Virus record (IMG/VR): IMGVR_UViG_3300013116_000108
Location: 140,101-204,100 of that record
Reading direction: 5' to 3' (one strand)
DNA: 64,000 bases
Both the position numbers and the translations under genes were made by a program. Positions 2,156 to 48,200 of this stretch are shown here, piece by piece (position 1 is the first letter of the stretch; the number at the start of each line of letters is the position of its first letter). Below the pieces are notes generated by a model, which searched no databases, was not told the origin of the DNA, and worked only from the letters and a program-made list of their open reading frames with translations.

Positions 2156-2533
2156 TTAGATAGCAACTATTGTCATTTTATTAACAGCAGAGTCATCCGA
2201 AATTGACCATGTGTATCTTACACCGTCAAAATCAGTACAAGATCTGTTGTACATTTTTTTGATATTTTTATAAGTTGTAGTACCGTTAATTACAGCAGAA
2301 ATAGACATTTCGTTAGCGCCTAAGTTCTCAGATGCTTTATCAACTAGTGTACATACACCTTCGTTACCTGAATCATCTTTAGCATCATCAACTAAAAATT
2401 TGTTTGATGATCTTTGTGATTTAATCATTCCTTGTACTGAAGCCGAGTTTGAACCTACTTTACAGTTAACATTAATGTTACCTGAATCTGTATCAACTTC
2501 ACCAAAGTGTTTTTTATTTACTGGACGTCCCAT
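2156..2533 (-). CDS. Conserved hypothetical late protein (125 aa)
   Basis: Strong Shine-Dalgarno AGGAG upstream; preceded by a late promoter and a structured leader. Confidence 0.7.
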   Translation of the reverse strand: MGRPVNKKHFGEVDTDSGNINVNCKVGSNSASVQGMIKSQRSSNKFLVDDAKDDSGNEGVCTLVDKASENLGANEMSISAVINGTTTYKNIKKMYNRSCTDFDGVRYTWSISDDSAVNKMTIVAI

Positions 2534-2617
2534 TTTTTTCTCCTAAGTTACGTTTTAAGTAATACGCGGTGGGTCAATTCCGCATAAGTCCACACCATTT
2601 GTGGCACGATTTTTGAC
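2534..2617 (-). ncRNA. Candidate structured 5' leader (cis-regulatory RNA)
   Basis: From the predicted +1 (2617): GUCAA, stem CCACA/UGUGG, stem AUGCGG/CCGCGU with a loop containing UUGAC (complementary to the 5' GUCAA), a weak UUAC/GUAA stem, then the SD. Confidence 0.45.
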
Positions 2618-22436: not shown

Positions 22437-22465
22437 ATTATTACACAAAGTAAATGCTTTGTCAA
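22437..22465 (-). promoter_or_regulatory. Sigma70-type promoter for the g47-g46-biosynthetic cluster operon
   Basis: TTGACA-17-(TG-T)AATAAT; the -35 element overlaps the g55 stop codon. Confidence 0.55.
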
Positions 22466-23385
22466 TCTTTTTCTTCTAAATCTTTCCCGTCATCTGTTTC
22501 CTCATAAGGCTTGCCGTGTTCTTGTTCCCATTCTTCAGCCGTCCATCTTCTCATTTCACTATTTGGATTTTTAAGTATCATCTTTCCTGATTTAATATCG
22601 TTCTCTGTTTGTCTTGTAAAACTTGGCATCAGCCCTGCTTCTTCTAAAATGTCATCTCGGATAATTTGATTTTTCTTTTCTAAATTTAATACTCTTGTAA
22701 AACTATTTGTAATTGCCGCTGTATAATAAGCAAACGGATTTTGTGATTTAGACTCGTCAAATTGTAAACCAATTTGTGCCAGTTGTAGCAATGCTGTACT
22801 TCGCATTTCGTCGTTGTAAGTATATCCTCTCCAATTTGATCTTGTAGCATATCTTTCACATAACTTTATAAACATTTTGGCTAAATTAGGATTAATGTTA
22901 CCGTGATCTTTATTAAAATATCCATTTTCTAGGCCGCCCTCCCAGTGACTCTTGCCAACCATTATTAATTCTCCACTAACTTCGTCAAATCTATAATGAA
23001 CAAATGGGGGGAAATTACACCTAACATGACGGTCTGCTAATGTTTTAGGATTCTTTTTTCTACCCGGCTCTTCTGGTATGTGATCAAATGTCATAACACG
23101 AAATACTACTTCATGTTTTTGGATTTTTTTCCAATCAATCGCAAATTCTGCCTGTTTTACTTTTTGTCCAGATTCAATTGCCTCTGTATAGGCAAGTTTT
23201 GCTAGTCGATCTGCCCGGTTTCGTTTTGCTTCGGCTGTGGTTCTTATATTAATTCTATCTACGCTTGGTAGAATAATATCATATTGTGAGTCAGTTTCGT
23301 CGTCTATATATGAACTGTAACTGTTCTTACTGTTGTGTATCTCCTTCAAAAGATCTCTATTATTTAAATATTTTTTTCTGGCCAT
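22462..23385 (-). CDS. g55: Late-transcription sigma factor (gp55-like)
   Basis: Motifs KKYLNNRDLLKEI and WRGYTYNDEM...FDESKSQNPFAYYTAAITNSF. Confidence 0.85.
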   Translation of the reverse strand: MARKKYLNNRDLLKEIHNSKNSYSSYIDDETDSQYDIILPSVDRINIRTTAEAKRNRADRLAKLAYTEAIESGQKVKQAEFAIDWKKIQKHEVVFRVMTFDHIPEEPGRKKNPKTLADRHVRCNFPPFVHYRFDEVSGELIMVGKSHWEGGLENGYFNKDHGNINPNLAKMFIKLCERYATRSNWRGYTYNDEMRSTALLQLAQIGLQFDESKSQNPFAYYTAAITNSFTRVLNLEKKNQIIRDDILEEAGLMPSFTRQTENDIKSGKMILKNPNSEMRRWTAEEWEQEHGKPYEETDDGKDLEEKD

Positions 23386-28441: not shown

Positions 28442-29563
28442 ATGGCGAAGGTAACTAGGGTAGGAGTTGACTCGCATCTTGGACACGCTTCACCTACTCC
28501 AAATCCATATCATGTAACACCGTATGCTACGGGTTCTAGTGACGTTATAACAAATGATCAAAATACTGTAAGAGTAGGAGACGTAACGGCTTGTGGCGAT
28601 CCTGCTGTTGGAAGTAGTTCATCAGTTTTTATAAACGGTCGCGGAGTACATAGGCAAGGAGACATTACAGGAGGACACGGCAGTTGGATACCTAATGCTT
28701 CTGCTAGTGGAAGTGATACTGTATTTGCCGGTGACTATGCTACTGAAGATTTAGGAGACGATACTATTGTATATCGTTTACCGCCTTTAGAAACACCCGA
28801 GCCTGTTGAGGGCGAACCAGATTCTATATACATGAAAAGTCATACACCTGGCGGCGGTGCTTTACCTCCTAGAGTAGATGGTGGTCCTGTTGTTGCGGCA
28901 GGTAATTCCGATCAAGCAACAGAAAATTTTGAACCAGGACCTCCAGGAGATTGTACAAGAAAAGACATTGGATCAGTTTCGTCTAAGTATGAATCAAATG
29001 GTAATGCTAGTGCTATAGGGCACGACTCAACAGGTGGATGGAGTTGGGGAGCATATCAAATTGCTACTAAAGTAGGAACATTTAAAAACTATATGAACTT
29101 TTTAAACAAACGATACAATGCCATTTATAATGAGTTAGAGAGTGTAGGCGGAAACTCAGCATTTACACAGGGTACAGATTCAGCAAAAGCAAAGTGGAAA
29201 GAACTTAAATCAAATCCAGACTTCTTACAAAGTCAACATGACTTTATCCAAGTAACACACTACGATAAACTTGTAGCAAAAATTAAATCACAAACAGGCT
29301 TAGATATCTGTGATGGCACACATTGTAATGGTTTACAAGATGCTATATGGAGTATATCTGTACAACACGGCCCAGGTTCTAGTATACCTAAAAAAGGAAT
29401 TACAGCCGCCGGCGAAGGTGCTACTGATGTACAATTAATTAATGCTATCTATGATGAACGTGATAACGTAAACAAATATTTTGCTTCTTCAACCGCGGCT
29501 GTTAAGTCGTCTGTTGCTAATAGATTTGCTCAAGAAAGAGCAGACTGCTTGTCTATTTGCTAG
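28442..29563 (+). CDS. PAAR (gp5.4-like) spike tip fused to a lysozyme-like domain
   Basis: N-terminal VTRVG.DSHLGH...VRVGD.TACGD...VFINGRGVHRQGD; Pro-rich linker; C-terminal SSKYES...DSTGGWSWGAYQI...WSISVQHG. Confidence 0.8.
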   Translation: MAKVTRVGVDSHLGHASPTPNPYHVTPYATGSSDVITNDQNTVRVGDVTACGDPAVGSSSSVFINGRGVHRQGDITGGHGSWIPNASASGSDTVFAGDYATEDLGDDTIVYRLPPLETPEPVEGEPDSIYMKSHTPGGGALPPRVDGGPVVAAGNSDQATENFEPGPPGDCTRKDIGSVSSKYESNGNASAIGHDSTGGWSWGAYQIATKVGTFKNYMNFLNKRYNAIYNELESVGGNSAFTQGTDSAKAKWKELKSNPDFLQSQHDFIQVTHYDKLVAKIKSQTGLDICDGTHCNGLQDAIWSISVQHGPGSSIPKKGITAAGEGATDVQLINAIYDERDNVNKYFASSTAAVKSSVANRFAQERADCLSIC

Positions 29564-29693
29564 TTTTATCAGAATTTTTCTTTGCTAATGGCCTAGCAAC
29601 ACTATCTTTTGAACGTTTTCTAAGTTGTGCTAAAGCACTTGCTTTACGTTTTAGTTCTGCTAAGGGTTTCTTTAAATCCCATTTAAAGTTCAT
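29553..29693 (-). CDS. Unannotated 46 aa highly basic peptide under riboswitch control
   Basis: MNFKWDLKKPLAELKRKASALAQLRKRSKDSVARPLAKKNSDKTSK* (15 Lys/Arg, 4 Asp/Glu); strong SD AAGGAGGGTG. Confidence 0.8.
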   Translation of the reverse strand: MNFKWDLKKPLAELKRKASALAQLRKRSKDSVARPLAKKNSDKTSK

Positions 29694-29717
29694 ATCACCC
29701 TCCTTATGTTAAGTTAG

Positions 29718-29765
29718 GTGCGTTCCTTCGGCGTATGCCTACTTCCGGCCTAATGGCTGAACGGT
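29718..29765 (-). ncRNA. Glutamine-I (glnA motif) riboswitch
   Basis: ACCGUUC-A-GCC AUUA GGC-C-GGAAGUA-GGC AUAC GCC-GAAG-GAACG-CAC: P1 CGUUC/GAACG, P2, P3 and the GGAAGUA/GAAG E-loop of glnA RNAs. Confidence 0.85.
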
Positions 29766-29770
29766 AAGGA

Positions 29771-29777
29771 TATTTAG
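29771..29777 (-). promoter_or_regulatory. Late promoter (CTAAATA) driving the riboswitch transcript
   Basis: With the core at -13..-6, +1 falls at 29765, two nt before P1. Confidence 0.6.
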
Positions 29778-29784
29778 TTATTTG

Positions 29785-29804
29785 TTGTGGCAAAAATGCC
29801 ACAA
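29785..29804. repeat. Perfect 8 bp inverted repeat (terminator or operator)
   Basis: TTGTGGCA-AAAA-TGCCACAA directly after the pncA stop codon and upstream of the riboswitch promoter. Confidence 0.6.
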
Positions 29805-30344
29805 TTATTCTCCTTTTACGGTAATCCCTAATTGAGTCATTTTGCTTGTTGCTTGTTCTACTGAACCAATAGAAGCACATGCTTCTTTAATTACTGTAAC
29901 ATTGTAACCTAGTTTAACAGCATCTGTGGCGCTCCATGCCACACAATAATCATATGCTACACCAACAAAGTCTAAATCTGTAATACCGAGTTGTTGTAGA
30001 TATCCGTGTAAGCCTGTTGTTGTAGTATGATCGTTTTCGTAGAAAGCACTATAACTATCTATGTGTTGTCTAAACCCTTTACGAACAATTAATTGTGCTT
30101 TGTGTGTATCTAATTCGTCTACACATTCAGCACCTTTTGTATTTGCTACACAATGAACTGGCCATGTTGTTTCAAAACTACTGTGGTTTTTTGGATGCCA
30201 ATCTTGTGTAATAATAATGTGCGAATATTGATCTTGTAATTCATTTATCTTTGGTATAACGTTCTCAGCGCCTTCAACAGGTAAACTTCCCCAACTCATA
30301 AAGTCGTTTTGAACATCAACTATTATTAATGCTTTATTTTCCAT
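29805..30344 (-). CDS. pncA: Nicotinamidase/pyrazinamidase (isochorismatase family)
   Basis: ALIIVDVQNDF..GSL, TQDWHP.NH, WPVHCV, RKG....DSYSAF and GVAYDYCV. Probable start MENK at 30344. Confidence 0.92.
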   Translation of the reverse strand: MENKALIIVDVQNDFMSWGSLPVEGAENVIPKINELQDQYSHIIITQDWHPKNHSSFETTWPVHCVANTKGAECVDELDTHKAQLIVRKGFRQHIDSYSAFYENDHTTTTGLHGYLQQLGITDLDFVGVAYDYCVAWSATDAVKLGYNVTVIKEACASIGSVEQATSKMTQLGITVKGE

Positions 30345-31077
30345 ACATGTCATAATACCACCTAGCATGAATATTTTGTAGAGAAAAATATTCATCGTCC
30401 ATCCATTCAGGGTTACTTTTTAATATGTTTACTTCAATACAACTTGATGTTTCTGCTAATACCCATTCCGCACTTTGTTTTATAATTTCGTCTGGGTGTA
30501 ATACATATGTTTTATCAATATATGGTCGTTCACCTTCTAGTTGTTCACCATCTGTTGTGCTAACATTAACAAACAAACTACTTACTATATTGTTGTGTTC
30601 ATTATCACCATAAAACTTTCTATACAATCCTCGCAATATATCTTTTGCTTTTGTAAAACTGTTCCAATAAGGAATATCATATAAATCAGCAGTTGAACCT
30701 ATTGCTACAATTCGTAGATGCTCTGAATTATTTCCTAGTTTATATAATGCAGGAGTTATGTTAACAAATGTAGTTACATTGCTATGAAATATGCTGTCAT
30801 CTAAGCCGTCACCGTCATTATCTATAACAGGATGATTCTCATCTTCAAATCTAAACTCTCCAGGTAAGTGTATATACACAACTAATCTATCTGATATTTC
30901 ACTAAAGAAATCTTCAGGCACAGGCGACATTAAGTCACATGTCATGTGTGTATATTCTAATCCATCAACAGGAGTTTCACTACGACTAATGCCGTAAATT
31001 TTTCCGTAATTTTTTAGGTGGTGGGCATATGCTAACCCAATATCTGATCTTATGCCAGCAATAACAAATGATATCAT
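30334..31077 (-). CDS. Atypical short-chain dehydrogenase/reductase
   Basis: Rossmann N-terminus FVIAGIRSDIG, IVAIGS, and a divergent Y..SxTKAK motif. Confidence 0.55.
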   Translation of the reverse strand: MISFVIAGIRSDIGLAYAHHLKNYGKIYGISRSETPVDGLEYTHMTCDLMSPVPEDFFSEISDRLVVYIHLPGEFRFEDENHPVIDNDGDGLDDSIFHSNVTTFVNITPALYKLGNNSEHLRIVAIGSTADLYDIPYWNSFTKAKDILRGLYRKFYGDNEHNNIVSSLFVNVSTTDGEQLEGERPYIDKTYVLHPDEIIKQSAEWVLAETSSCIEVNILKSNPEWMDDEYFSLQNIHARWYYDMYGK

Positions 31078-31097
31078 GTTTTTCTTTCTCTTAAAAT

Positions 31098-32309
31098 TTA
31101 TAGTTCTTCTCTATTTGTAGCGGCATCCCAGGCTTTACTATGTAACCCACCCCCACACATTTGTTGGCATTCGTAAGTACATAATTTGTGACTTGGATCT
31201 TTCCACGTTAAAGGTAAGATACTTTGAAAGTATTCATGATAAAATATTTCTTCTGCTGTATGTTGTTCTAAGTTGTTCCAACCTACACCATATTCTTTCT
31301 CTAACTTGTTATAATGTGTCATATCTTCTTGCTTTGTAGCCGCAATGTGGTTACAAGGCCATAAGTTCATTTCGCTATCAATATACATCATTTTATTTTC
31401 TTTAAAGTCGCAGGTAACTTGCGACATGTCTGATGATTCAATGATATCTTTATAAATTTTAGCGCCAGCATCTGTAATGTTTAATTCTTTTGCTGTTTCG
31501 GTTATCTCAATGTCTTGTTGATAAGATGTTCCATCAACATATTGAATCTTGCTTATTTCATCACCTTTAACTTCTTTACGATTTTTTGCTACTTTCTTAA
31601 TATCTGTTTCAACTGTAATTGCTTTTGGTGTATTTTGACTTTTTTCTAAGTGTTTAGCATTTTTATTTTCAACTTCGGCATAGTTATATTCCCAATTCCT
31701 AGTAGAAACATGCTTGTCAAATTGCCAAAAACCCATGTCCTTTGCTAGTTGTTGTGCTTCATCGACTTGATGTTTGTTATGCTCGAACACAATCATTTTC
31801 CATCTTGCTTTTCCGCCAGCATTAATATATGCTTGAGCATTAGCCATTACACGTTCGTGTTTAATTCCTATACGATATAACTTGTTAGTATCTGCTAATC
31901 CGTCAATACTAAATGTCATAATCTTTTCTATGCCTTGTGCCCTTTCGGCATAACCCATTGCTTTACCTACTCTAGCCCAACTTTCTGGTGATCTCATACT
32001 ACCGTTAGTTTCCACATCTATAATATAAGGACGTTTTGCTGTCTCAATAATAATTTCTTCCCAGTCAGGTGTCATAACAGGGTCGCCGTGACAACCACAA
32101 AATACCATATTAACTGGATTATCAATAGTAACAATATGTTTCATTCCGTCTAAAAACTTGTTCCATTGTGGGGCAAGTATGTGCCTTTGCCTCAAAGTAG
32201 GACGAACAATGCTAGTTCCCATGAAATGTCGAGGACATAATGGACAAGCAACGTTACAAAATGTTGATGTTTCTACTTGAAATGAATCTATTTCTTTAAA
32301 ATTAAACAT
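31098..32309 (-). CDS. Radical SAM enzyme with a SPASM/Twitch-like C-terminal domain
   Basis: CNVACPLC, FCGCHGDP, ETNGSMR and FSIDGL; C-terminal cysteines CDF...WPCNH...CTYECQQMC. Confidence 0.9.
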   Translation of the reverse strand: MFNFKEIDSFQVETSTFCNVACPLCPRHFMGTSIVRPTLRQRHILAPQWNKFLDGMKHIVTIDNPVNMVFCGCHGDPVMTPDWEEIIIETAKRPYIIDVETNGSMRSPESWARVGKAMGYAERAQGIEKIMTFSIDGLADTNKLYRIGIKHERVMANAQAYINAGGKARWKMIVFEHNKHQVDEAQQLAKDMGFWQFDKHVSTRNWEYNYAEVENKNAKHLEKSQNTPKAITVETDIKKVAKNRKEVKGDEISKIQYVDGTSYQQDIEITETAKELNITDAGAKIYKDIIESSDMSQVTCDFKENKMMYIDSEMNLWPCNHIAATKQEDMTHYNKLEKEYGVGWNNLEQHTAEEIFYHEYFQSILPLTWKDPSHKLCTYECQQMCGGGLHSKAWDAATNREEL

Positions 32310-35700: not shown

Positions 35701-36299
35701 CGTATTCAGACTTGTATAGAGAATGGATTTTAGATGTTACAGATAAAATTATAAAGCCAACAGAACCTACAGCAGAAAACTTGAGAGCGTCATTTAGCAC
35801 TATTGAAAATTCTAAAAGTATTTCAGATACAATAATATATCACTCAGCAAAATTTAAACCATTGTTTGGCGATAAAGCAGACACTAGTTTACAAGCAATC
35901 TTTAAAGTTGTAAAACTACCAGGCGCTGGCATTAGTGACTCTGAAGTTAAAGCATCTATTATTGATGCTATTAATGACTACTTTAATGTTTCAAATTGGG
36001 ACTTTGGTGATACTTTTTACTTCTCAGAATTAAGTGCTTTCTTACATAATACGTTAGCAAATAAAATAAGTTCTGTTGTTATTGTACCAAAAAGCACAAC
36101 ACAAGTATTTGGTAGTTTATTTCAAATCCGCAGTAATTACGATGAAATTTTAATCAGTGGAGCAACAGTTGACGATGTAGAAATAATTGATAGTATAACA
36201 GCAACTAAGATACAAGCAGGTGGTTCTATATCGAGTTTAGATACTACTACAAACACAACAGCAAGTGCTGTTACAACTAGCGGGAGCACCTCGTACTAA
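32772..36299 (+). CDS. g6: Baseplate wedge protein (gp6-like, extended, 1175 aa)
   Basis: DFETLRSTMISYLRKQFPEDFNDF.ESSE, ENFLETAERRDS and QNRMVNGEDY. Confidence 0.85.
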   Translation: MATSTRQTNLFVSEDWKKVYQTFKSADFESYDFETLRSTMISYLRKQFPEDFNDFVESSEYIALIDLIAFFGQSLAYRQDLNARENFLETAERRDSILRLASLLSYKPKRNTTSIGLLKIVSISTTEDVFDSNNNNLSGKTIFWDDSVNSDYEEQYNTIINAALSSAQRIGKPANEVTTGSIKTQEYELNLLANTQPLLPFTAVTNGADTKFELVNGTISGESYIYEKSPIPGSTYNFLYRSDGKGNASANTGFFTMFKQGTLGQIDFNLTSGLPNITYSIDKANINNTDVWLYELEDDGTVGDEWTQVPAISGSNVIYNSLSLSNRKLFAVESMVDDKIKLVFADGVFADIPKGTFRCYFRQSAGTTYSIKSTDINNVELNFNYISRTNQEENLSIGLTLQQNINTANRNETLTNVKKLAPQAYYTQNRMVNGEDYNIYPLTQFTSIIKSKAVNRAASGISRFLDVKDTTGKFSSTNIFSDDGVFYKEYTTKKDTFSFLNDNEIIDVIKNTLEPNLASKPMYHFYLDKFVSQAFANKVTWVKVSSTSNTTTGYFKDATGEAIQIGTGVSNVNKYLTLNSMIKFIPETGKHFMSNGSHMDGTDTDHIGATMQTWSSIKLIDTNGLGGLGNGLKSAGVGAVTLNELVPTGATVERVFPKWVSDIPTSLENTIKTNIKEYKDFGLRFDHITSTWSIITSDNLAVDKGYSDDNAGNTSGTKIDASWLVQFTTDGVQYTIKTRQLDYYFASKDETRFYFDKAIKIYDSVTGTTIKDRCTVLKVNNRPTSNKPLEEDYALDIIDMVTEVDGYKDNTKVKVTLGDADNDSVTDNPEMFEKIVGVDDPTGLAKNRKFVFFKQFYDYDNIERYQPIGQKVICYDYKTMREIHSNKGLFPEGKVFYATTENKFTTSFKDATGTLKLTPAANPGEQFGGNLGSEVQAYKVYIGRDNLKFQYKHNAPNNRRIDPSPSNLIDMYILTQSYSDLYREWILDVTDKIIKPTEPTAENLRASFSTIENSKSISDTIIYHSAKFKPLFGDKADTSLQAIFKVVKLPGAGISDSEVKASIIDAINDYFNVSNWDFGDTFYFSELSAFLHNTLANKISSVVIVPKSTTQVFGSLFQIRSNYDEILISGATVDDVEIIDSITATKIQAGGSISSLDTTTNTTASAVTTSGSTSY

Positions 36300-39200
36300 T
36301 GGCTAAAAGAAAGACAAGTTCGTTTTTACCTAAGGCGTACCAAACAGAAAAAAATAAAAAGTTTTTAAGTGGAACATTAGACCAGTTAATGAACAGTTCC
36401 AACCTTACAAGGATGGACGGATATATTGGTCGTAGGTATTCGCCAAGTTATAAAACTACAGATAATTATTTGGCATCTTCTGGATTAAGAAGTAATTATC
36501 AATTAGAACCTGCTATTGTACTTAAAAAAGATTCAAACATCGCAAGTGATAACGATGTTGGTTCAATTGTAACATACGACGACCTGCTCCACAAACTAAA
36601 AAATAATAGTGTTAATACAACTGATCACAATAAACTTTTTAATCAAGAATTTTATAACTGGTCAGGGTTTATTAATTTTGACACTCTTGTAAACTACGGA
36701 AGTTATTACTGGCTTAAAGATGGGCCTAATGCTGTTACTGTAACAGGTAAAGATATTAAAACATCAGGAGCATGGTCAACAAAATACGATTCTGTAAACA
36801 ACGAATATACAGTCTCAGAAATAAAAGGCAAGAACCCTACAATTTACTTACGTCGGGGCGGCAATTATACGTTTACAGCAGATCAAACAGCAGAATTTTA
36901 TATACAAACAGAGCCAGGGTCAATCACTGGAATTGAGAAGGCATCTCCTACAAAAAGCACTAGAGAAATTTATGGTGTTGAAAACAACGGCAGTAAGAAT
37001 ATAACATTTACAGTTCCGCCAATTGATGCTCAGTCATGGTTTGATACAGATTTATCTCTTTTACAAGATGTTAATTTAGTAAGTAATTTACCATGGAACA
37101 AAGTACAGGGACGAGATGTCGACAACCTTATTTCATTAGATAGTGGTATTGACAATCAACGTGTATTAGATGGCAAGACTATTATATTCATACAAGATTC
37201 TGATTCTGCAACAGATAACACTAACTGGACAACTACTGGTATAGATTATACTCAAGCACCTTATAAAGACACAGGATTTTCTGTAAACAACGGACAAGTT
37301 GCTACAGTAGATAGACAAGGTGTCTATCAAATTAGTATTGTTAGTAATAAAATTGTATTATCAAAAGTTGCTAATATAACTTTTACTGATAAAGTTTATG
37401 TTACAGAAGGATCAACATACGCCGGAAGGCACTTCTACAAAGCAGTAGAAACTAATCACATTACAGTTATTCCTATACTAACAGCAAAACTAGATACACT
37501 TTACTATCAGCATGCCACAGATAAAACAGCATATGGAACAATTAAAATAGTTAGTGACGTTGCTCAATCAATCGAGCCGGCTGACTTTTTAGGGAAAAAA
37601 ACTTATACCGCACCTAACGGTGTTGTGTTTACTAACGGACTAAAAATAACATTTGATACAACTATAACAGAAACAAAATATAAAAATAAGTCGTTTTATA
37701 TAGAAGGTGTAGGCGACAGCATACACCTAGTAGATACTACATTAACTATTTCTGAAACAGGCTCTGAAACTAAAGATTATATTGTAATGGCGAGAGGTGC
37801 CAAAGATATGAATGCCTGGAGTAGAGCAAACAAATGGTTTCATAAGGATGTTATTACAGCGGCCGCAACGTATAACAATGAAATAATAAGTGTTGACGAT
37901 AGTTTAAGAGCAGTAAGACCTATCATTGAATACAATGCTGGGTTACATTTATACAACCACGGTACTACTGGTATTAGTGGTGTTTCGCTAATTGATACAA
38001 CAACTACAGACGCACTATCTAATATAAATGGCACAAGTGGTTCCTATGTTGATAGCACAGAATTAAAAGCCTTTGACAGAATTATTTTTACAAAAGATAA
38101 TGACTTACAAACTAGGAAAACTATTTGGACTGTTGGTTGGAGAGATATTAACGGTGATTCAACTGTTGATTTCTTAACACTTGGAAATGATGACGCATCA
38201 GAAGTTACTACAGGCAGTAGTGTTGTTCTTAACAAAGGTCTAACAGGTAAAGGAAAAACATACCACTGGGACGGTACTAATTGGATCGCTTCACAAACTA
38301 AAACAAAAATAAATCAATACCCTATTTTTGAATTATATGATAGCAACGGTGTTAGTATTAATGATACATCAACATATCCGTCGAGTGACTTTTTAGGAAA
38401 TAGTTTATTTAAGTATAGTACAGGAACTGGAACAAACGATACAGAATTAGGGTTTCCGTTAAAATACAGAACATTTAATAATATAGGTGATATTTTATTT
38501 GATAACACCTACGTCAACGAAACATTTAATTATAAGAAAACAACAGGTGTAACAGAAATAAGCACAGCAACCACGTTAGCAAAAATAACACATCCTTATA
38601 GCGGAGCAGTGACTTATTCAAATGGTTGGACTAAAGGTATCCAAAAAAGTAGACAGTATCAGCAAGTAGAATATACAGTCGAAGATGTAACTGTTAAGTC
38701 ATACAACTTAGGAGCAAATCCAGATGTATCGACAACAGCATTGCCAACAACATTTGTTTATATTAATAACAAACGTACAAAGAATTTTACAATAGCATTA
38801 GAAGAAGGATTTTATAACTGTAAAATAGAAGATACTCTTTCATTAGGCGATTCTATTACTATTCAGTTTTACAGTCAAACAACTTCTAAAATAGGATACT
38901 ATGTGGTTCCTAAGAATTTAGAAAGCAACGGACAAAATGAAAAGTTTGCTAATATTACTTTAGGACAATTACAAAATCACATTACCGCATTAATTGATAC
39001 TAATAAATTTTTTACAGGTTCGTTACAAGGAAGTAATAATTTAAGAGACTTATCCGGAGCAAAAGAGACAGAAGGACTAATAACACAGCACAGTTCACCA
39101 ATGATCCTTCCTATGATTTTTAGTGAGCACAGCAACGTAAACTATGTTAATTCGTTAAAGTTTGCTAATGCTGAATATGAAAAATTTAAATCTAAATTCT

Positions 39201-42200
39201 TAAATTCTTTAGAAACTTTAGACGGATTAGACTTAACAAATGTAAGTGAAACTGTTGATACTATCATGGAACATGTTAATGCTAATAAAAGTTCAACGTT
39301 TCCTTTTTATACGTCAGACATGGTTCCTTACGGAGCGGATGTAGAAATAACAACATACACTATTACTGACGATAGAGACAAAACATACGAGATTGACAGT
39401 ATATTTGACAATACACTTCCAAGTAATAGAGCTATATTGGTTTACTTAAATGATGTACAACTATACAATGACATCGACTATACATTTGAATCAACTAGTT
39501 CAAACATTAGGCTTATTAAAACAATAGCAATTGGCGACGTGTTAAAAATTGCCGACTACAATAACACACTAGGAAACTACGTTGCTCCTACACCGACTAA
39601 ACTGGGACTGTATCCAAAGTTTAAACCTGAAATAGTCAGCGACAACACTTACGCTGACACACAAACTATTATTATTGGGCACGACGGTAGTAGAACTATA
39701 GCATATGGCGATACTAGAGATAATGTTATATTAGAACTTGAAAAAAGAATTTACAATAATATTAAAACACATTATCAAGAAAACGTATTTGATATTAAAA
39801 AGTATACTCCAGGGCGTTGGAGAGAAACTGATACAACAGTAGCAGAAGTTAATGATATTTTAGAAGATGAGTTTTTACGTTGGACTACTAAACATAGAAT
39901 TAGTTATACTGATAACACATTCTTTGATGCTAACGATTCTAAAACTTGGAACTATAAAAACTTTACAGATAAACTAGACAAAAGTTTATTCAAGCAAAGC
40001 CACTGGAAGGGATTGTTTGTATATTATTACGATACTTATAAACCTCACACTAATGCTTGGGAAATGTTTGGTTGGACTGAAAAACCAACTTGGTGGGAAA
40101 CCAGGTATGGTGTAGCACCTTATACATCAGGCAACGAAGTATTATGGAATGATGTAAGAGACGGTCACCGATATACTAGTGCTACAGAATTTACAGCAAG
40201 TACTTTGTATAAAAGAGAAAACATATATTCAATGATGCCTGTAACAGAAAATGGAGAAATATGTTCTCCTATTGATTGCTTAACTACTAACGCAGGCGAT
40301 TTGTCACCAAGCCATTCATGGAAATACGGAGACGGTGCTCCGCCGGAAATTGCTTGGAAAAACTCTAGTAGTTACCCATTTAGTGTACAACATTTATTAT
40401 CACTAATTAGGCCAGCAGAATACTTTAGTCAACTGTTTAATAAAAGTCAAATAGTTAGAGGAGCATTAACTGATCAGTTAGTGCTAACATCAACTAACCA
40501 GCGTCAAACACCTTCGGATTTAAAAGTTGATACTTCTACTACAAGATACGAGGGCTGTGGAAACTATATTGCCGATTATTTACGTTGGTTAAATGTAGAT
40601 GTACAAACAAATTTAACAGACATACTTAAAAACTTAGATATTAAATTGGTACACAAATTAGAAGGCTATACAGATAAAAAACTTATTAAAGTATTAGCAG
40701 AACAAGTGTCGCCAACTAGTACAAGTAACTCTGTTTATGTACCAGATGAAGACTACGCTATCCATTTACATAAAACAGGCCCAATTAAAACTATACCATA
40801 CAGTGGTGTAATTATTCAAGGCAATGCTAGTGGATATACTGTATTTGGTTATAATTTAAATAATCCAAGATTTACTATTCACAAGCCTATAGAAAACGGC
40901 AACTTTAAAATACATGATGTTAACGACGATCGTGTTGTAGAATACGAAGATTATTCTACAGAAGAGGAATCTATTCCTTACGGAACTTCGTTTGATACAA
41001 AACAAGAAGTAGCAAATTTCTTGTTCTCTTACCAAAAATATTTGACAAACAGTGGTTACGATTTTGATAATAGAATGGAAGACTTTGGTACACAAAAAAT
41101 TGTAGCAAACTGGACGATGAGTGTTAAGGAATTTGTTCATTGGTCTGGGCAAGGCTGGACACCAGGGTCAGTTATTACAATAAGCCCTAGTTCACTAAGA
41201 GTTAGATGCTTAACGTCAATGGGTGTTGCTGATACTTTGTCTAACAGTCAAGCCGAGACAAATGTATTAAACGCTAACTATGAACCACTAAGACCGGGTT
41301 CGTATAAAATGAACAGGCAAGACAACGAATTTGAATTAACACCAAATGAAATTGCCGGAGGCATTTATTTTGTTAATGCTAAACTTGTTGAGTATGAACA
41401 TGTTTTAGTGTTTAACAATGTGACAAGATTTAATGACGTAATATACCAGCCTGGATTAGGCAACAGACAATATAGACTAAGAATAGTAGGAAATAAAACA
41501 GGTGGCTGGGATGGTAGTTTATCAGCAGAAGGATTTATTTACAATGATGGCAACGTTCCTGGTTGGGTAGAAAATACAAACTATTCGCGAGGTGACATTG
41601 TTAAATTTAGAGACAGGTTATATACAAGTTCAGTATCACATACAAGCTCAAATAAATTTGTATATGAAAACTGGACACAAACTGATTCATTTAAAATAGG
41701 ATTACTTCCTAACTTTGATACATTAGGTAAAAACTTTGAAAGTTTTTACGACATTAATGCTGTTAACTTAGAAAGCGAAACAGACAAGTATGGCAAGGGT
41801 TCTATTGGCTATCAAAATAGAGAATACTTCAATCAAATTGGCATGGATGATGTTAGCCAAGTTAAGTTTTATCAAGGAATGTTACAAGAAAAAGGTACAA
41901 CAAATGCTGTTAACAAATTAATTAGAAGCAAGTTTGATAAAATTAGTAGTGACATTAATTTTTATGAAGAGTGGGCTATTAGAAATGCTGAATACGGAGC
42001 AACTGACTTAAACTCTAGAGTTGAAATACAACTAAACGAAGAAGGATTTATAGATAATCCACAACCTATTACAACACTTAACACAACACAAGAAAAGTCT
42101 AGTGTTGACAGCAAGACTGAATATCTAACAAGTGAGTTATTTAAAGCACCAGCAGATATAAGTTATGACTGGGTTCCAGTAAGGAAAAATTATGTTGATG

Positions 42201-45200
42201 GACATAAGGACAATGTGTTTTATGACGACTTGTATCCAAATGCTGGATACCCTAAATTAACAGATGCTGATGCTACATTATTTTACAACAAAGACACAGA
42301 TACATTAAAAGATTTAACACCTGACATGAATGTAGGTTATACCCTTTGGGTCGCAGAAGATGAAACTGGCGATTGGGATATGAAATATTTAGATACTACT
42401 TCTATAGAAGTTACTAACTGTGACGGTGGAACAACAGGTGCTACTTATACTTGGACAACCGCAGATGATCATTCATTACAAATAGGTGATATTGTTGTTG
42501 TTAAAGGGTTCCACACAGATGATACTAAATTACTACGAAATGGTGTATATACTATTCAAACAGTACCAACTACATCAACATTTACAACAATGGGCGGTGG
42601 TGAATCAGGTAAAGATTCAGAAGCAGGTTCTAGTGTATTATTAAAATTTAAAAGTATTAGATTTAAAGACGGTGAGCAAATTACAGCACCTAAACTAGGA
42701 TGGCAAACAAACGACAAGTTTTATGTAGACAAAGATGAAGCAGGTTATTGGTTTGTAGCAAAGAAAAATACAAAGTTTACTCAGCAACAATCACTTACAC
42801 CATTACTTGGAGTTGCTAATGAAGAGTTTGGCGATGCTATTTGTTCTGACATGGATAATCAATGGCTAGTTGTTGGACAAAAATCACAAAATAGAATACA
42901 AATATATACTCCAAATCCTGCAGAATTATCACAAAATGCCGTAATCAATAATAGTGTTAATGGAGTTTTAGAATTAGGTGCCAGCGTTAGTACAGGCGCT
43001 CCGGTTTGGACAAAGCCACCTTCAACAACAGACTATAAGCAAGTACAAGGAATGTTTAGAGAAGATTTCCTAGGAAAATATGAAGAATGGGACAACGGCA
43101 AGCGTTGGATAGTAGTTGGAGCACCAGGCACTGATAGCAATAAAGGTGCTGTATTATTTTATTATTACGATTCAAAAAGTGGCACATTTTTGCCAGGAAC
43201 TATCGACCAGCCAACAGGATTAACAACAAGTGCTAAGTTTGGTAGTGTTGTAAAAATGAGTGCTAATGAATTATGGTGTGCTGTTTCGGCACCAGGTGAT
43301 AAAAAAGTATTTTTATACAATAGAATGGCCGTGTCAGGAGAAAGCACTTACAACACCACAGGCGACGGTAGTACAACAGAGTTTGTATTAGACATTTGGT
43401 GGAGCAAAATAACATCAGCCTCAGAATTATATATTCGCTTAGATTCAACTGAGCAAATGGCTACTAGAGATTTTACATACAACGCAAACACTAGAACAAT
43501 TACATTTACTAGTGCTCCTGCGAATGGCACAGCAATCAGTATATCATACTTAGGCGGTTGGAGACTCGCAAAAACATTTACAGGAACAACTGCTGACTAC
43601 GGTGCGAGTATTAGTTTAGATAGTAACGGTCGACATTTAGTTATTGGTGCTCCTAATACAACAACTGTAGGATCTGTTACTACAACAAACATGGGCGCCG
43701 CTGAAATTAAAACAAGGCACTGGCAATGTTTCACTGGCGATGGAACAACAAAGGCATTTACAGTTGACGTGTCAGATCTAACTGGTGTTATTGTTTACCA
43801 AAACGGAACACCAATTGATAGTATCGGTTCAGATAGTGCTGTGTTATGGACAGTATCCGGCAATACGCTTACGTTTACATCAGCACCGCAATCAAATGAT
43901 GAAATAGCAATATGGACAAATGAATGGCTATCATTACAAACAATTATACCAAGTGGCAATGGCAGACAAGAAAATGGACAATTTGGATCATCAGCAATAG
44001 AAATAGATGAAGCAGGTCAAACAATTTATGTTGGTGTTCCCGAAGCAGACGGTGTTATAGAAAATTCAGGATTAATACAAGTATTTGAAAGAAATCAAAA
44101 GATAAACCAAGGCAAACTAATTTTATCTTCAGAGAAAGAAGGATTTTCATCATACAACGCAGGTGAAAGTTTTTATATAAACGGGTATAAAGTTACAGCA
44201 TCAGGAACTACTATTGAGTCAATATCAACAGATATTAATAATGCTAATATACCGGGCATTACATCAACAGTTACAGGTGATAGCCCTAATCAAATTTTAA
44301 GTGTTAGCCATAGTTCTGGAGTATTAAATACTATCGATATCACCCCAGGAGTAACAGGCACTATATACAAAGACATTGGGTTGAAACCTTTTACTACACC
44401 AACAGACATTACACTGAATCAAGAAATTACTAGTGGACATAAGTTTGGCGAAGTTATTAGAGTTAGCAGAAATAATGACTTATTAGTTGTTGGTTGCCCA
44501 AGCGGGTCAACTCGTGTTTACACAACAATAGACAACAAAAAAACATTGTTTGATGGCAGTGGCACTAGATTTACTGTTCAAACATATTATACAGGTTCGG
44601 CTCACGTATTCCAAAAATTAGGAAAGAATTGGGTTGAAGCAGATAGTTTGTACACAAACAATACATCTATTAATGATAAATTTGGTTCTAGTATAGCAAT
44701 TAGTAATGATACAGTTTATGTTGGAGCACCATGGGAAGATGATGGCAATACACAGAACACAGGTAAAATTATAAGATACGGCAAGTCAGGTGAGTTGTTT
44801 AGCATCGACGAAAGAGAAACAGCATTAGTTGATATTGACAGGATTAATAAAGCATTCTTATATAATAAAAGTACAAACAATATTTTAGCATACTTAGATT
44901 ATATTGATCCTATTAAAGGTAAAATATTAGGTGAAGCAGAACAAAACATTGATTATAAAACATCATGGGATCCTGCTGTATATAATTATAGCACCGGAGT
45001 ACATCAAGTCAACAATGGAGATGATCCGTGGATTGCTGAATCATTTATTGGAAAGATTTGGTGGGATTTAAGTGAACTTAAATTTATTAATTACGAACAA
45101 GGTGATGCAGATTACAAATCATTATTTTGGGGAGGATTATTTCCTGGAAGTAAAATAGGAATTTATCAATGGGTCGCATCAGATGTGCCTCCTGTTAACT

Positions 45201-48200
45201 ATACCCCAGGTGTTGCGAAATATGGCAATGATGCTTATGTACAAGTTGACAAAATTAATAATGCTACTAATAACTTAGAAACAACGTACTACTTCTGGGC
45301 ATCAGGTATAACTGAGATTAACATTGATAAAACGTTAAGTACTGAAGGTATTGTAAAACTTATCCAAGACCCTACAACAAACGGTGGACCATTTATACAG
45401 TTTATTGGAAATAACCAATTAGCACTAGTTAATGTATCTAGATATTTAGAAGCAACAAATACAGTACTAGCAGTAGAGTATGATAAAAAACCAAATGATA
45501 AGATACTACATACAGAATGGGAATTAATACCTGAGGGTAGTCCGACTCTCGAAATCCCGGAAGATTTATTTAATAAAATTAAAGACAGTTTAGCAGGAGC
45601 AGATAAGACAGGTAACATCGTTCCTGACATTAATCTTAGTGCAGGCGACAAGTACGGTATTAAAATAAGACCAAGACAAGGTGTGTTTATGAATAGATAC
45701 CTTGCTTTAAAAGAATACCTAACGTATGTAAATGCTGTTATTAAAAAGTATAATATAGTAGATAACTTAGACTTTAGTCTATTAAATGAAGAAGAGGCAT
45801 TGCCCCTATCGACGTCAGGCACATATGATGAAAAAGTTAAAACGTTAACTGAATTATCTTATATTAGAGTAGCAACTAAAGACATAGGTTATAATGCCTT
45901 AGTTGAAACAGATTCAGAAGTAAACGGCAGGTGGGGTATACACACTTTACAAAGTGACGGCACATGGTTGAGAACTAGAACACAAAGTTATGATACTAAA
46001 AAGTTTTGGAGTTACATAGACTGGTATGAACCAGGTTATACAGTAGATACTAACATTGATTATCGTTATACCGACTTTAATAAAGTATACGAAAACGAGA
46101 GTGTAATAGCAGATAAAAGTATTATTAAAATTACAACTGGTGATAGTTGGGATTTATATGTTAAGGAAGATGGAAAACATAATCTTATAGGTCAAAAAAA
46201 CGGTACTTTGAAGTTTGGTGATAATTTATACGATTATGTCAAAACTAATTACGGATTTGATACAGATGGGTATGACTTTAACTTAATGGATACTGAGCCT
46301 CAAATAGAAACTAGAAATATTATTGACTCTATTAAAAATCAAATACTAATTAACGATTTACAAAATGAACATAACAAATTAATGTTTGTGTTGTTAAAGT
46401 TTGTACTTCAAGAACAAAACTATGTTGATTGGATTTTTAAAACAAGTTTTGTTCAAGTTAAACATAACTTAAGAGCATTAGATCAATTTCCTACATATCA
46501 AAGAGATAACCAAGAATTTGTTAAAAATTATATTAACGAAGTAAAACCTTATCACACAAAGATTAGAGAATATGTGTTAGGTTATAACAAACAAGAAACA
46601 TATGACAGTGACGTTTCGGACTTTGACCTACCTTCGACTTATGACCAAATTACTAAAACATTTAGATCACCTAATAAAGAAAAAAGCCACGATAGTAACA
46701 CAATAGAAAATAGCAATGCTTATAAAATGTGGAGAGAAAACTATACATACTCAGTTGATAGTGTACGATTATCACGTTGGGGGATAGGATATCAAACAGC
46801 ACCTGTATTAACATTCTCAGCACCACAAATAGCAGGAGGCGTTACTGCTACGGCAACATGTACAATAAAAGACAATCATATAGATGTAGTAACAATGACT
46901 AACAAAGGTAGTGGTTATACTGAACCTCCAACAGTAACAGTATCCGGCGGTAGCCCTACAACTGATGCTATTATACATCCTGTACTAGGAAATGCTAAAA
47001 CTAGAAAAATAAAAGAGACATTAAAATTTGACAGAATCAAATTTAGTTCAGATGTTAAAACATGGGCAAAAAATACTGCTTACACAACTAGTGATATTAT
47101 TCAATATAATAACGAAGCATACACAGTTAATGAAAACTTTACATCTGGAGCGTCGTTTGATAGCGACAAGTTAACAGTTAAAGCAGATAACACATTTAAT
47201 AATGCTATGGACAGAACAATGGCATACTATAATCCAGAAACAGGAAGTGATGCTGTAGATTTAGGAACAATATTTAAAGGCATTACATACCCAGGAACAA
47301 AAGTACAAGGCCCGCTATTTTCGGCTGAACCTGGATTTGACAAATCTAAATTTGACAATAAAGCATTTGATAATTATGATGTCGACAGCGATGGTAGATT
47401 TGTTTTAAGTTCTAGAAATTTAGATTTAGATTTAGAAAGCAAATTTAATGATACACAACTAGGATTAAGACCTGAAGATATTATTATTGACGGTAGTAGC
47501 AAGTTTGTTGACGCCTATAGTTCACATGCTCCAGAAGAGTTTGTACCGGGTAGAGTATTTGATAGTTTAAGTATTAATGTACGAACGTCTCCAAGTACAG
47601 ATACAGACAGCGACGGGGCATTAGGATTTCCGATCTATGCTATTAACTATAAAGGTGATGGAGCAAACAAGGTATTTAAATTTGGCGATGACAAAACAGG
47701 AACAGACCAAGAAGTTATTGTTTGGTCAAAATTAGGAGGCAGAAAAGCCAGTACCGATTATACAATTGATTGGACATTAAAGACAGTAACGTTCAACACA
47801 GCACCTGCGGTAGGCGAAATAATTGAATTAACAAGTTTTGGAAACACAGGAAACTCTGTATTACTTGATTATGAATTTACAGCATATTCTAGTACTTCTA
47901 GTGTTATTTTACCAATAAAATATTCACTAATAACAAGTAAGCAATACTTTATTACAATTAATGGTGTTTCTAATACAACAGGTGCCCTAACAGAAAGTGG
48001 CGATAGTACGTTATGGACGCCAGCATCAGCATTAGGTGCCGGCGACAATGTTAGGTTTATGTTCTTCGATGTGGCTTCAAGTGCTACAAGAACATACAGT
48101 AAAGTAACAGTAGACGAGTTTACATGGACATCAGGTGCTAAGACATTTACATTAACAGACGGTTCAGATACTGACTTAGCAAGAACAGATAAAATTATTG

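What the first reader, a model, noticed from the sequence alone, without database searches (positions are those of the whole stretch)
29553..29777. Phage-encoded glutamine riboswitch controlling an unannotated basic 46 aa peptide from a late promoter
The RNA matches the glnA/glutamine-I architecture: P1 CGUUC/GAACG, two 3 bp hairpins, and the GGAAGUA/GAAG E-loop. It begins at the predicted +1 of a TAAATA late promoter. Immediately 3' of P1, CACCU can pair with the SD region AGGGUG, a plausible expression platform. The ORF encodes a peptide with 15 Lys/Arg. In cyanobacteria this riboswitch class switches on the glutamine synthetase inactivating factor IF17 (established). The phage peptide shows no evident similarity to IF7/IF17 but is similarly small and basic. 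This suggests a nitrogen-sensing module by which the phage adjusts host N assimilation, translation or lysis timing during assembly. The ORF also overlaps the PAAR-lysozyme stop by 11 nt in antisense.
Basis: partly seen in the sequence, partly recalled or inferred. Interest (0 to 1): 0.88.

Follow-up and report, generated by a model that had tools for sequence, protein, structure and literature searches.

The report
Phage glutamine riboswitch driving tiny basic peptide
A jumbo phage carries a genuine glutamine-sensing RNA switch, fired from a late promoter, that gates translation of a conserved 46-residue basic peptide; the same switch-plus-mini-gene cassette recurs across marine phages and its purpose is still unknown.

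Summary
Window 29765-29717 (-) is a full-length glutamine-I riboswitch (Rfam RF01739, 58.2 bits, cut-off 35). It starts at the predicted +1 of a T4-type late promoter box; the window also encodes a gp55-type late sigma factor. The C just 3' of P1 begins a CACCU tail that pairs with GGGUG in the Shine-Dalgarno region. This helix covaries across 79 distinct phage leaders. The 46-aa ORF is a real gene: at least 886 protein clusters, median dN/dS 0.16, essentially phage-only. It is unrelated to IF17/DUF4278.

Beyond the finding: in 102 of 104 assessable viral glutamine-I aptamers, an ORF of 100 aa or less follows (median 38 aa, 97% net positive). These fall into at least 7 multi-member sequence families, only one DUF4278-like. 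About half the aptamers have TAAATA 4-10 nt upstream. In Melnitz the published target (tmRNA) is probably wrong: an unannotated 32-aa ORF follows the aptamer.

In 46 of 80 related loci the peptide gene, without a riboswitch, lies in a lysis cassette. I therefore favour a lysis-associated role over a glutamine synthetase inhibitor, with low confidence. The sensor is known; the output gene family and the generality are new.

The parts
29784..29805 (.). G+C-rich hairpin between the isochorismatase-like gene and the promoter. On the + strand it scores as a terminator-like site for the convergent baseplate/PAAR-lysozyme transcript.
   Evidence: Equivalent hairpins precede the promoter box in related loci.
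29771..29778 (-). T4-type late promoter box ACTAAATA (core TAAATA 29776-29771). The predicted +1 is 29765.
   Evidence: All 4 exact TATAAATA boxes in the window lie 20-45 nt upstream of ORF starts in the right orientation. TAAATA ends 4-10 nt before P1 in 61 of 131 viral aptamers, with a peak at 6 nt.
29717..29765 (-). Glutamine-I (glnA-type) riboswitch aptamer. P1 29763-29759/29725-29721; P2 29757-29755/29750-29748; E-loop strands 29747-29740 and 29729-29726; P3 29739-29737/29732-29730.
   Evidence: RF01739, 58.2 bits (GA 35), E 3e-10, full model. Compensatory changes in P2/P3 among homologous leaders. The last P1 pair is CG to UA in Mosig.
29716..29720 (-). Anti-SD tail CACCU. Its first base, C29720, is the invariant C just 3' of P1, the 'linchpin' position of the published model.
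   Evidence: This C is invariant in 79 of 79 distinct platforms. It pairs with 29700-29696 in the MFE fold. The model is described in PMC6212724.
29696..29706 (-). Shine-Dalgarno region UAAGGAGGGUG. GGGUG (29700-29696) pairs with CACCU. UAAG (29706-29703) pairs with CUUA (29713-29710) in this copy.
   Evidence: Columns 38-42 of alignment A2.
29553..29693 (-). ORF of 46 aa, basic (15 K+R, 4 D+E). It belongs to a conserved phage small-protein family with the motif SA.AQLRKRSK.S.ARP.A.KN. It lacks the family's usual C-terminal DPRLQGI.
   Evidence: 886 clusters; dN/dS 0.16. predicts one long helix, residues 3-33, mean pLDDT 77.5.
28442..29563 (+). Convergent neighbour: PAAR + VgrG3-like C-terminal lysozyme, a tail-tip protein. 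Its last 11 nt overlap the peptide ORF in antisense.
   Evidence: PF05488, PF21277.
22462..23385 (-). gp55-type late sigma factor, the trans-acting factor expected to read the late promoter box.
   Evidence: phrog_12791, E 1.6e-76.

Best explanation
A late-transcribed, glutamine-gated translational ON switch for a phage micro-protein.

Late in infection, host RNA polymerase carrying the phage gp55-type sigma starts at about 29765 from the ACTAAATA box. The transcript therefore begins with the aptamer.

Without glutamine, the tail CACCU (whose first C lies just 3' of P1) pairs with GGGUG at the 3' edge of the Shine-Dalgarno sequence. In this copy an inner CUUA/UAAG stem adds to this, so the ribosome-binding site is buried. 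When L-glutamine binds, that C is recruited into the aptamer's long-range pair, the short masking helix melts, and the 46-aa basic peptide is translated.

The peptide is a conserved, helical, soluble phage protein with no cellular homologues. Its most likely role (inferred, about 0.35) is as an accessory or regulatory component of host lysis, so that the phage ties a late step to the cell's nitrogen status.

Shown here: aptamer identity, conserved promoter box and spacing, covarying masking helix, coding selection, lysis-cassette synteny in relatives.

Inferred: glutamine binding, the ON direction, the transcription start, and what the peptide does.
For: - Aptamer: RF01739 at 58.2 bits against a cut-off of 35.
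- Same layout (hairpin, TAAATA box, 5-8 nt, aptamer, GCACCUAA, spacer, GGAGGGUG, AUG) in 22 of 80 loci found through the peptide alone.
- Masking helix, permutation test: each tail's own SD region pairs better than shuffled partners in 0 of 10,000 permutations, both for 74 classes and for 28 distinct tails.
- Masking helix, alignment A2 of 79 distinct platforms: 75.3% of cells paired against 39-53% for slid controls; 24 double-sided changes against 9.9 in shuffles, 0 of 500 reaching that. Types seen: CACCU/GGGUG, CACUC/GAGUG, CACUUU/GAAGUG, CAUCUUU/GGAGAUG, CAAUCUU/GGAGAUUG, CGCCU/AGGUG, and Mosig CUCUUUU/AAAGGAG.
- The MFE fold forms the helix.
- Published model and ON behaviour of the same class in the Synechocystis gifB leader: PMC6212724.
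- Late promoter.
- Real gene: 886 clusters, dN/dS 0.16 at dS 1.24, exact peptide on at least 24 contigs.
- Lysis link: in riboswitch-less loci the peptide's start overlaps the stop of a holin (PF11351, 38.9 bits, cut-off 24.8). A TM/coiled-coil protein follows, then an Amidase_2 or Peptidase_M15_3 endolysin. 46 of 80 loci have the holin and/or the TM/coiled-coil neighbour within 1.5 kb.
Against: - There is no binding or expression data. The ON direction is taken by analogy with one tested cyanobacterial leader.
- The masking helix is only 5 bp.
- About a quarter of platforms in A2 do not fit it. Most of these front DUF4278-like and related ORFs with a GUAAAGGAGCA SD region.
- The window copy is not next to a holin or endolysin, and no homologue of that holin or TM protein is in the 64-kb window.
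- The isolates that carry the peptide do not show that holin family, and phages with the holin do not show the peptide.
- The peptide has no TM segment. The family consensus is not amphipathic (helical moment 0.26; 0.49 for the window copy), so a membrane-active role is not indicated.
- The window variant lacks the family's conserved C-terminal motif.
- The host is unknown.
Confidence: 0.75

Rival explanations
1. Same riboswitch and platform, but the peptide is a functional analogue of the cyanobacterial glutamine synthetase inactivating factors (IF7/IF17). When glutamine is high, it shuts off host GS to save ATP and glutamate for phage production.
For: The only tested output of this riboswitch class is IF17, a small basic protein (PMC6212724). 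Phage aptamers also front true DUF4278-like ORFs: 12 of 14 YRG-type peptides hit PF14105, best E 5.7e-07. All phage output peptides are small and basic. The high conservation across podo-, myo- and jumbo phages fits a conserved host target.
Against: No sequence or profile relationship to DUF4278: Pfam has no hit and hhalign gives probability 0.07%. Most family members have no riboswitch and sit in lysis cassettes. According to PMC9004378, the Melnitz host lacks glnA, yet Melnitz has the same cassette with another peptide family.
Confidence: 0.2
2. Same riboswitch, but the peptide binds nucleic acid or the ribosome. Examples would be a translation modulator or a DNA counter-ion. Glutamine gating would then simply restrict synthesis of a nitrogen-costly Lys/Arg-rich product to nitrogen-replete cells.
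For: Strong positive charge, a single long helix plus an extended conserved tail. Near-invariant sequence across distant phages. At least 7 multi-member sequence families share only small size and basicity.
Against: No similarity to ribosomal or nucleic-acid-binding families in Pfam, NCBIfam, PHROGs, PDB or 1.84 billion representatives. There is no direct evidence.
Confidence: 0.15
3. The aptamer is an OFF switch, or acts mainly through the antisense overlap with the convergent PAAR-lysozyme transcript, rather than by unmasking the SD.
For: P1 and the masking helix are adjacent and could in principle stack rather than compete. A + strand terminator-like hairpin at 29784-29805 suggests that the baseplate mRNA runs antisense across the whole cassette.
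Against: The tested member of the class is ON with glutamine. The convergent arrangement is specific to this phage, whereas the aptamer-tail-SD layout is conserved in many unrelated contexts.
Confidence: 0.07

Closest known systems
Type 1 glutamine riboswitch in the Synechocystis gifB (IF17) leader (Klahn et al. 2018, PMC6212724)
   Same: Same aptamer family (RF01739). Same position in a short 5' UTR. The same proposed platform: the C after P1 and the following bases mask the ribosome-binding site. The output is a small basic protein.
   Different: Here it is phage-encoded and started from a T4-type late promoter. The output peptide is not DUF4278, and the host is probably a heterotrophic proteobacterium. 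The platform helix here has comparative support from 79 leaders.
Glutamine riboswitches reported in Methylophilales phage Melnitz, Pelagibacter phage Mosig and pelagimyophage MAGs (Buchholz et al. 2022, PMC9004378)
   Same: Phage-encoded RF01739 in T4-like marine phages of streamlined heterotrophs. In Mosig the aptamer fronts a member of the same peptide family.
   Different: That paper assigns the Melnitz riboswitch to the tmRNA gene. Here the aptamer lies 3' of the tmRNA and 5' of an unannotated 32-aa basic ORF with the same CACUU/GAGUG platform. The window phage is a ~291-kb PA5oct-like jumbo phage, not a Kyanoviridae member.
glnA RNA in T4-like cyanophages (Weinberg et al. 2010, PMC2864571; S-CREM1, PMC9964418)
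   Same: The same RNA family is known in phage genomes.
   Different: Those reports list the RNA without naming a controlled gene. Here the output gene, promoter and platform are defined.
Glutamine-II / Downstream-peptide riboswitch (RF01704)
   Same: Glutamine sensing upstream of very short ORFs (17-100 aa).
   Different: A different fold. No RF01704 match in the window or in the pelagiphage loci.
Small soluble lysis-cassette proteins such as the T4 RIII antiholin cofactor or the cationic phiKT gp28 'disruptin' (recalled from memory, not tested here)
   Same: Small, no TM segment, encoded inside lysis cassettes.
   Different: No sequence relation was tested. The family consensus is hydrophilic with a low helical moment. 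In large phages the gene is detached from lysis genes.

Membership tests
Glutamine-I riboswitch (Rfam RF01739, glnA RNA) | Covariance-model score at or above the curated gathering score over the full model | tested here: met
   58.2 bits against 35, model positions 1-53 of 53, E 3e-10.
Glutamine-I riboswitch (Rfam RF01739, glnA RNA) | Three-stem junction (P1, two hairpins) with conserved E-loop letters CGGAAGUA / GAAG and an invariant C 3' of P1 | tested here: met
   cmscan alignment. The C is invariant in 79 of 79 platforms.
Glutamine-I riboswitch (Rfam RF01739, glnA RNA) | Stems maintained by compensatory change in homologues | tested here: met
   P2 variants: GCC/GGC, UCC/GGA, ACUC/GAGU, UCUUU/AAAGA, GUGC/GCAU. 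P3 variants: GGC/GCC, AGC/GCU, GC/GC. P1 pair CG to UA in Mosig. MAFFT misaligned P2/P3, so these were read by eye and not counted by a tool.
Glutamine-I riboswitch (Rfam RF01739, glnA RNA) | Selective binding of L-glutamine with a conformational change | not testable with these tools
   Needs in-line probing, ITC or NMR.
Glutamine-I riboswitch (Rfam RF01739, glnA RNA) | Expression platform coupling the aptamer to the downstream gene | tested here: met
   Tail/SD helix: 75.3% paired, 24 double-sided changes against 9.9 in shuffles (0 of 500), slid controls 39-53%. Permutation test 0 of 10,000.
GS inactivating factors IF7/IF17 (Pfam DUF4278) | Sequence membership in DUF4278 (YRG repeats) | tested here: not met
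   No Pfam hit at E<0.1. hhalign against phage DUF4278-like peptides gives probability 0.07%. No YRG motif.
GS inactivating factors IF7/IF17 (Pfam DUF4278) | Binds and inactivates glutamine synthetase | not testable with these tools
   Needs a biochemical assay.
T4-type late promoter | TATAAATA-like box about 6 nt upstream of the start, no -35 element, phage gp55-type sigma present | tested here: met
   ACTAAATA matches 6 of 8 positions with an intact TAAATA core. Homologues have TATAAATA, ATAAATA or CTAAATA at the same place. There is a positional peak at 6 nt. The window's 4 exact boxes are all upstream of ORFs. A gp55-like gene is present.
T4-type late promoter | Mapped 5' end and late timing | not testable with these tools
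   Needs 5' RACE or dRNA-seq through an infection.
Phage lysis cassette component | Encoded next to holin, spanin or endolysin genes | tested here: inconclusive
   Met in relatives: 46 of 80 loci; holin PF11351, Amidase_2 or M15_3 endolysins; overlapping stop/start codons. Not met in the window, where the gene stands alone and the neighbouring lysozyme is a virion tail-tip protein.
Phage lysis cassette component | Membrane or secretion signal typical of holins or spanins | tested here: not met
   No hydrophobic segment and no Cys or lipobox. One soluble helix is predicted.

The most novel reading that the evidence does not exclude
Marine phages carry a modular, mobile 'glutamine-gated micro-protein' cassette: a promoter (often late), a glutamine-I aptamer, a linchpin-C anti-SD tail, and an ORF of 16-81 aa. 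Its outputs are at least seven multi-member sequence families of basic peptides, only one of them IF17-like. Together these peptides form an unrecognised class of phage effectors that couple late-infection decisions (lysis timing and/or shut-off of host nitrogen assimilation) to the host's intracellular glutamine. The window's peptide is one such effector. It was recruited from podophage lysis cassettes and placed under the switch in large phages.
Probability: 0.3. Interest if true: 0.85.

Novelty: new variant of a known kind. Interest (0 to 1): 0.62.

Why it matters
Riboswitches in viruses are rare. For the glutamine class in phages, no regulated gene had been convincingly named, and the one published assignment (tmRNA in Melnitz) looks mistaken.

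This locus gives a complete, testable unit: promoter, sensor, covarying platform and a conserved output protein. The survey shows the unit is general: 102 of 104 assessable viral aptamers front a tiny basic ORF.

That turns 'why do phages of nitrogen-limited ocean bacteria sense glutamine?' into bench experiments with cultured systems (Mosig or HTVC023P on SAR11, Melnitz on OM43). It also flags several abundant micro-protein families that standard annotation misses.

The comparative support for the linchpin-C/anti-SD helix also strengthens a mechanism that had so far been proposed from one cyanobacterial leader.

Tried and rejected
- DNA similarity of 29400-29900 to phage records: no match.
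- Pfam, PHROGs and NCBIfam on the peptide: nothing.
- PDB profile search: only a chance coiled-coil match to geminin, E 0.022.
- Profile search of 1.84 billion representatives: 64 small proteins, all the same family, with no link to any larger family.
- GTDB genomes: 4 hits, all short MAG/SAG contigs, so no cellular homologue.
- The three podophage loci have no riboswitch of any Rfam family at E<1.
- RiPP idea (a radical SAM gene lies three genes upstream in the window): rejected. That context is unique to this phage, and the peptide has no Cys or conserved core typical of such precursors.
- Obligate holin partner idea: not supported.
- P1 5' strand pairing with AUGAAC: not general across peptide families.
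- RNAalifold on MAFFT-aligned full leaders recovered only P1 and part of the platform, because the P2/P3 loops misaligned.
- Ames & Breaker 2011 and Ren et al. 2015 are not held in the library. The structural mechanism is therefore cited through Klahn 2018.
They were rerun without it.
Full report
**1. Observation**

The region reads exactly as described. cmscan of the whole window against Rfam 15 gives two hits above gathering score. One is RF01739 (glutamine riboswitch, glnA leader) at 29765..29717 on the minus strand: 58.2 bits against a cut-off of 35, E 3e-10, covering all 53 model positions.

Read from the sequence:
- P1 is CGUUC (29763-29759) with GAACG (29725-29721).
- P2 is GCC/GGC and P3 is GGC/GCC, 3 bp each.
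- The E-loop strands are CGGAAGUA (29747-29740) and GAAG (29729-29726).
- CTAAATA lies at 29777-29771. The sixth base after it is 29765, the first base of the Rfam match.
- The ORF 29693..29553 encodes 46 aa with 15 Lys/Arg and 4 Asp/Glu.
- It overlaps the stop end of the PAAR + VgrG3-like lysozyme gene (28442-29563, +) by 11 nt.

**2. The genome**

The window is the structural region of a large T4-like phage. It carries a major head protein, portal, baseplate hub and wedge, SbcCD-like nuclease and a gp55-type late sigma factor. The exact peptide occurs on at least 24 public contigs, the longest 291,168 bp. The capsid protein is about 70% identical to that of the PA5oct and Phosso jumbo phages of Proteobacteria. 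GC content is 34.8%. The host is unknown but is probably not a cyanobacterium.

**3. Late promoter**

Exact TATAAATA occurs 4 times in 64 kb, against about 12 expected. All four copies lie 20-45 nt upstream of an ORF start in the correct orientation (with the ORF list). A real promoter motif that is avoided elsewhere behaves this way.

The box before the aptamer is ACTAAATA. In related loci the same position holds TATAAATA, ATAAATA or CTAAATA, 5-8 nt before P1. Across 131 viral aptamer instances, TAAATA ends 4-10 nt before P1 in 61, with a sharp peak at 6 nt. The transcription start is predicted, not mapped.

**4. Expression platform**

Klahn et al. 2018 (PMC6212724) cite the crystal-structure work. 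They propose that the C just after P1 forms a glutamine-dependent long-range pair. In the free state, this C and the following bases pair with the ribosome-binding site. They showed experimentally that the gifB leader switches ON with glutamine.

In the window that C is 29720, the first base of CACCU. CACCU pairs with GGGUG (29700-29696) at the 3' edge of AAGGAGG. The minimum-free-energy fold forms this helix plus an inner CUUA/UAAG stem (z = -2.2).

Comparative test. I collected leaders in two ways: through the peptide and through an aptamer pattern in viral contigs.
- The tail and the SD flank change together: CACCU/GGGUG, CACUC/GAGUG, CACUU/GAGUG, CACUUU/GAAGUG, CAUCUUU/GGAGAUG, CAAUCUU/GGAGAUUG, CGCCU/AGGUG, and in Mosig CUCUUUU/AAAGGAG.
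- A tail's own SD region pairs better than permuted partners in 0 of 10,000 permutations. This holds for 74 classes and for 28 distinct-tail representatives.
- On an unselected MAFFT alignment of 79 distinct platforms, the 5-bp helix is paired in 75.3% of cells, against 39-53% when the partner is slid.
- That alignment has 24 double-sided changes against 9.9 in column shuffles, with 0 of 500 shuffles reaching that.
- The non-fitting quarter are mostly leaders with a GUAAAGGAGCA SD region in front of DUF4278-like and related ORFs. These may use another arrangement.

**5. The peptide is a real, conserved, phage-specific gene**

- tblastn finds it in Pelagibacter phages HTVC023P, HTVC103P, HTVC104P (podophages) and Mosig (myophage), with an invariant core SA.A.LRKRSK.S.ARP.A.KN.
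- A profile search returns 886 protein clusters, nearly all 51 aa and without Pfam domains.
- At least 570 viral-contig stretches encode it.
- Only 4 short MAG/SAG contigs among 185,579 species genomes do.
- Sixty distinct 51-codon genes give a median dN/dS of 0.16 at dS 1.24.
- An exhaustive profile search of 1.84 billion representatives finds only 64 small relatives and no link to a larger family.
- PDB, Pfam, PHROGs and NCBIfam give nothing.
- AlphaFold predicts one long helix (residues 3-33) and a less confident tail; mean pLDDT is 77.5.
- The window copy, like L007, has lost the usual C-terminal DPRLQGI.

**6. The riboswitch is a removable module**

- Of the 80 best viral loci for the peptide, 22 have the aptamer at a fixed place about 50 nt before the AUG.
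- In Mosig the aptamer scores 50 bits and ends 17 nt before the gene.
- Close relatives L077-L083 keep the same upstream hairpin and TATAAATA but lack the aptamer. Their AUG lies 10 nt after the box.
- The three isolated podophages have no Rfam match at E<1.

**7. What the peptide sits next to**

In riboswitch-less, podophage-type contigs the gene is inside a lysis block, in this order:
- a 128-136-aa holin whose stop overlaps the peptide's start (PF11351 GTA_holin_3TM, 38.9 bits, cut-off 24.8);
- the peptide;
- a ~125-aa protein with an N-terminal TM helix and coiled coil (phrog_20984), whose start overlaps the peptide's stop;
- a ~72-aa protein;
- an Amidase_2 or Peptidase_M15_3 endolysin.

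Within 1.5 kb of the peptide, 24 loci have the holin, 39 have the TM/coiled-coil protein and 17 have both, which makes 46 of 80 loci. None of these 46 carries the riboswitch.

In myophage-type contigs the gene lies between an Hsp20-like and a peroxiredoxin-like gene. In the window it stands alone after an isochorismatase-like gene. The holin family and the peptide do not co-occur in isolated phages, so the peptide is not an obligate partner of that holin.

**8. A general cassette**

I set aside 11 matches without a CGTTC P1 strand, 7 that are the first aptamer of a tandem pair and 6 at contig ends. That leaves 104 assessable aptamers.
- 102 of the 104 have an SD and a start codon within 60 nt.
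- All 102 ORFs are 100 aa or shorter, and 100 of them are 70 aa or shorter.
- Median length is 38 aa, and 97% are net positive, with a median net charge of +6.
- The start codon lies a median of 27 nt after the linchpin C.

BLAST clustering of 100 unique peptides gives families of 26, 21, 14, 10, 8, 6 and 4 members, two pairs and singletons. The family of 8 is ours plus a sister group sharing the C-terminal ...RP..EKNILSDDPRLQKI. Only the YRG-repeat family is DUF4278/IF17-like: 12 of 14 members hit PF14105, best E 5.7e-07. Our family shows no relation to it (hhalign probability 0.07%).

**9. Melnitz**

The published account places the riboswitch in the 3' domain of ssrA and says it controls the tmRNA (PMC9004378). 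In the record:
- the tmRNA model ends at about locus position 1491;
- RF01739 (52.8 bits) occupies 1499-1547;
- CACUU...GGGGAGAGUG...AUG follows, with an unannotated 32-aa basic ORF at 1570-1668 that belongs to the largest family above.

The annotated CDS there is on the opposite strand. The likely regulated gene was therefore missed.

**10. Literature**

Phage glutamine riboswitches are on record:
- Weinberg 2010 described the RNA in marine sequences.
- Cyanophages S-CREM1 and S-SCSM1.
- Melnitz, Mosig and pelagimyophage MAGs.

Searches of the held library found no description of the micro-ORF outputs in phages, of this peptide family, or of the late-promoter coupling. An earlier pelagimyophage survey reported no riboswitches at all. 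Ames & Breaker 2011 and Ren 2015 could not be read here, so prior mention there cannot be excluded.

**11. Verdict**

The RNA is an ordinary, high-scoring member of a known riboswitch class, and its presence in a phage is not new. Four things are new:
- the defined unit of late promoter, aptamer, covarying masking helix and output gene;
- the output gene, an abundant phage-only micro-protein unrelated to IF17;
- the modular gain and loss of the aptamer;
- the generality of 'glutamine riboswitch followed by a tiny basic ORF' in marine phages.

The mechanism of the switch is well supported by comparison, but no experiment backs it here. The peptide's function is open. Synteny favours a lysis-associated role (about 0.35). 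The regulatory analogy favours a GS or nitrogen-metabolism effector (about 0.2). Its composition allows a nucleic-acid or ribosome binder (about 0.15).

Noticed in passing
L215 (Melnitz MZ577097.1) 1499-1668: The glutamine aptamer lies 3' of the tmRNA. It is followed by an unannotated 32-aa basic ORF (1570-1668, +) with the same anti-SD/SD platform. The record annotates a CDS on the opposite strand instead. The published 'riboswitch controls ssrA' reading probably missed the target.
   Followed up: yes
window 2531-2605 (-): A freshwater-2 RNA motif (RF02980, 51.3 bits, cut-off 49.9) lies in the 5' UTR of a 125-aa ORF (2156-2533, -) that begins MGRPVNKKH. A GATAAATA box sits about 15 nt upstream. 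A homologous ORF lies 84 nt downstream of the peptide gene in locus L007. PHROGs gives no function.
   Followed up: partly
window 29784-29805: This hairpin scores as a terminator on the + strand. The convergent baseplate/PAAR-lysozyme transcript would therefore run antisense through the whole peptide gene and aptamer (about 240 nt of overlap). Possible antisense interplay was not examined.
   Followed up: no
window 36299-49327 (+): A single 4342-aa ORF lies directly after the baseplate wedge gene. It is presumably a giant baseplate or fibre protein. It was not analysed.
   Followed up: no
window 29805-32309 (-): Three genes lie upstream of the cassette on the same strand: radical SAM (403 aa, sub-threshold Pfam), a weakly SDR-like 247-aa protein, and an isochorismatase/nicotinamidase-like 196-aa protein. 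A TATAAATA box precedes the first at 32351-32344. This looks like an auxiliary metabolic trio and is conserved in all population copies.
   Followed up: partly
L102, L107, L127, L154, L169, L194, L201: Tandem pairs of glutamine aptamers sit in front of a single micro-ORF. The ORF families are MTKYQ...NPFYP and MT(L/M)WTRYCR. [quoted passage not shown]
   Followed up: no
window 29759-29764 and 29688-29693: The P1 5' strand (GUUCA) is complementary to the start codon plus Asn codon (UGAAC), and the MFE fold pairs them. This could be a second OFF-state contact in this copy. It is not conserved across peptide families.
   Followed up: partly
L095, L098, L105, L119, L128, L160: Some viral aptamers front extremely short ORFs of 16-18 aa (MKEVTLVYRGVKYTKRV type), which look like minimal single-YRG versions of DUF4278.
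   Followed up: no
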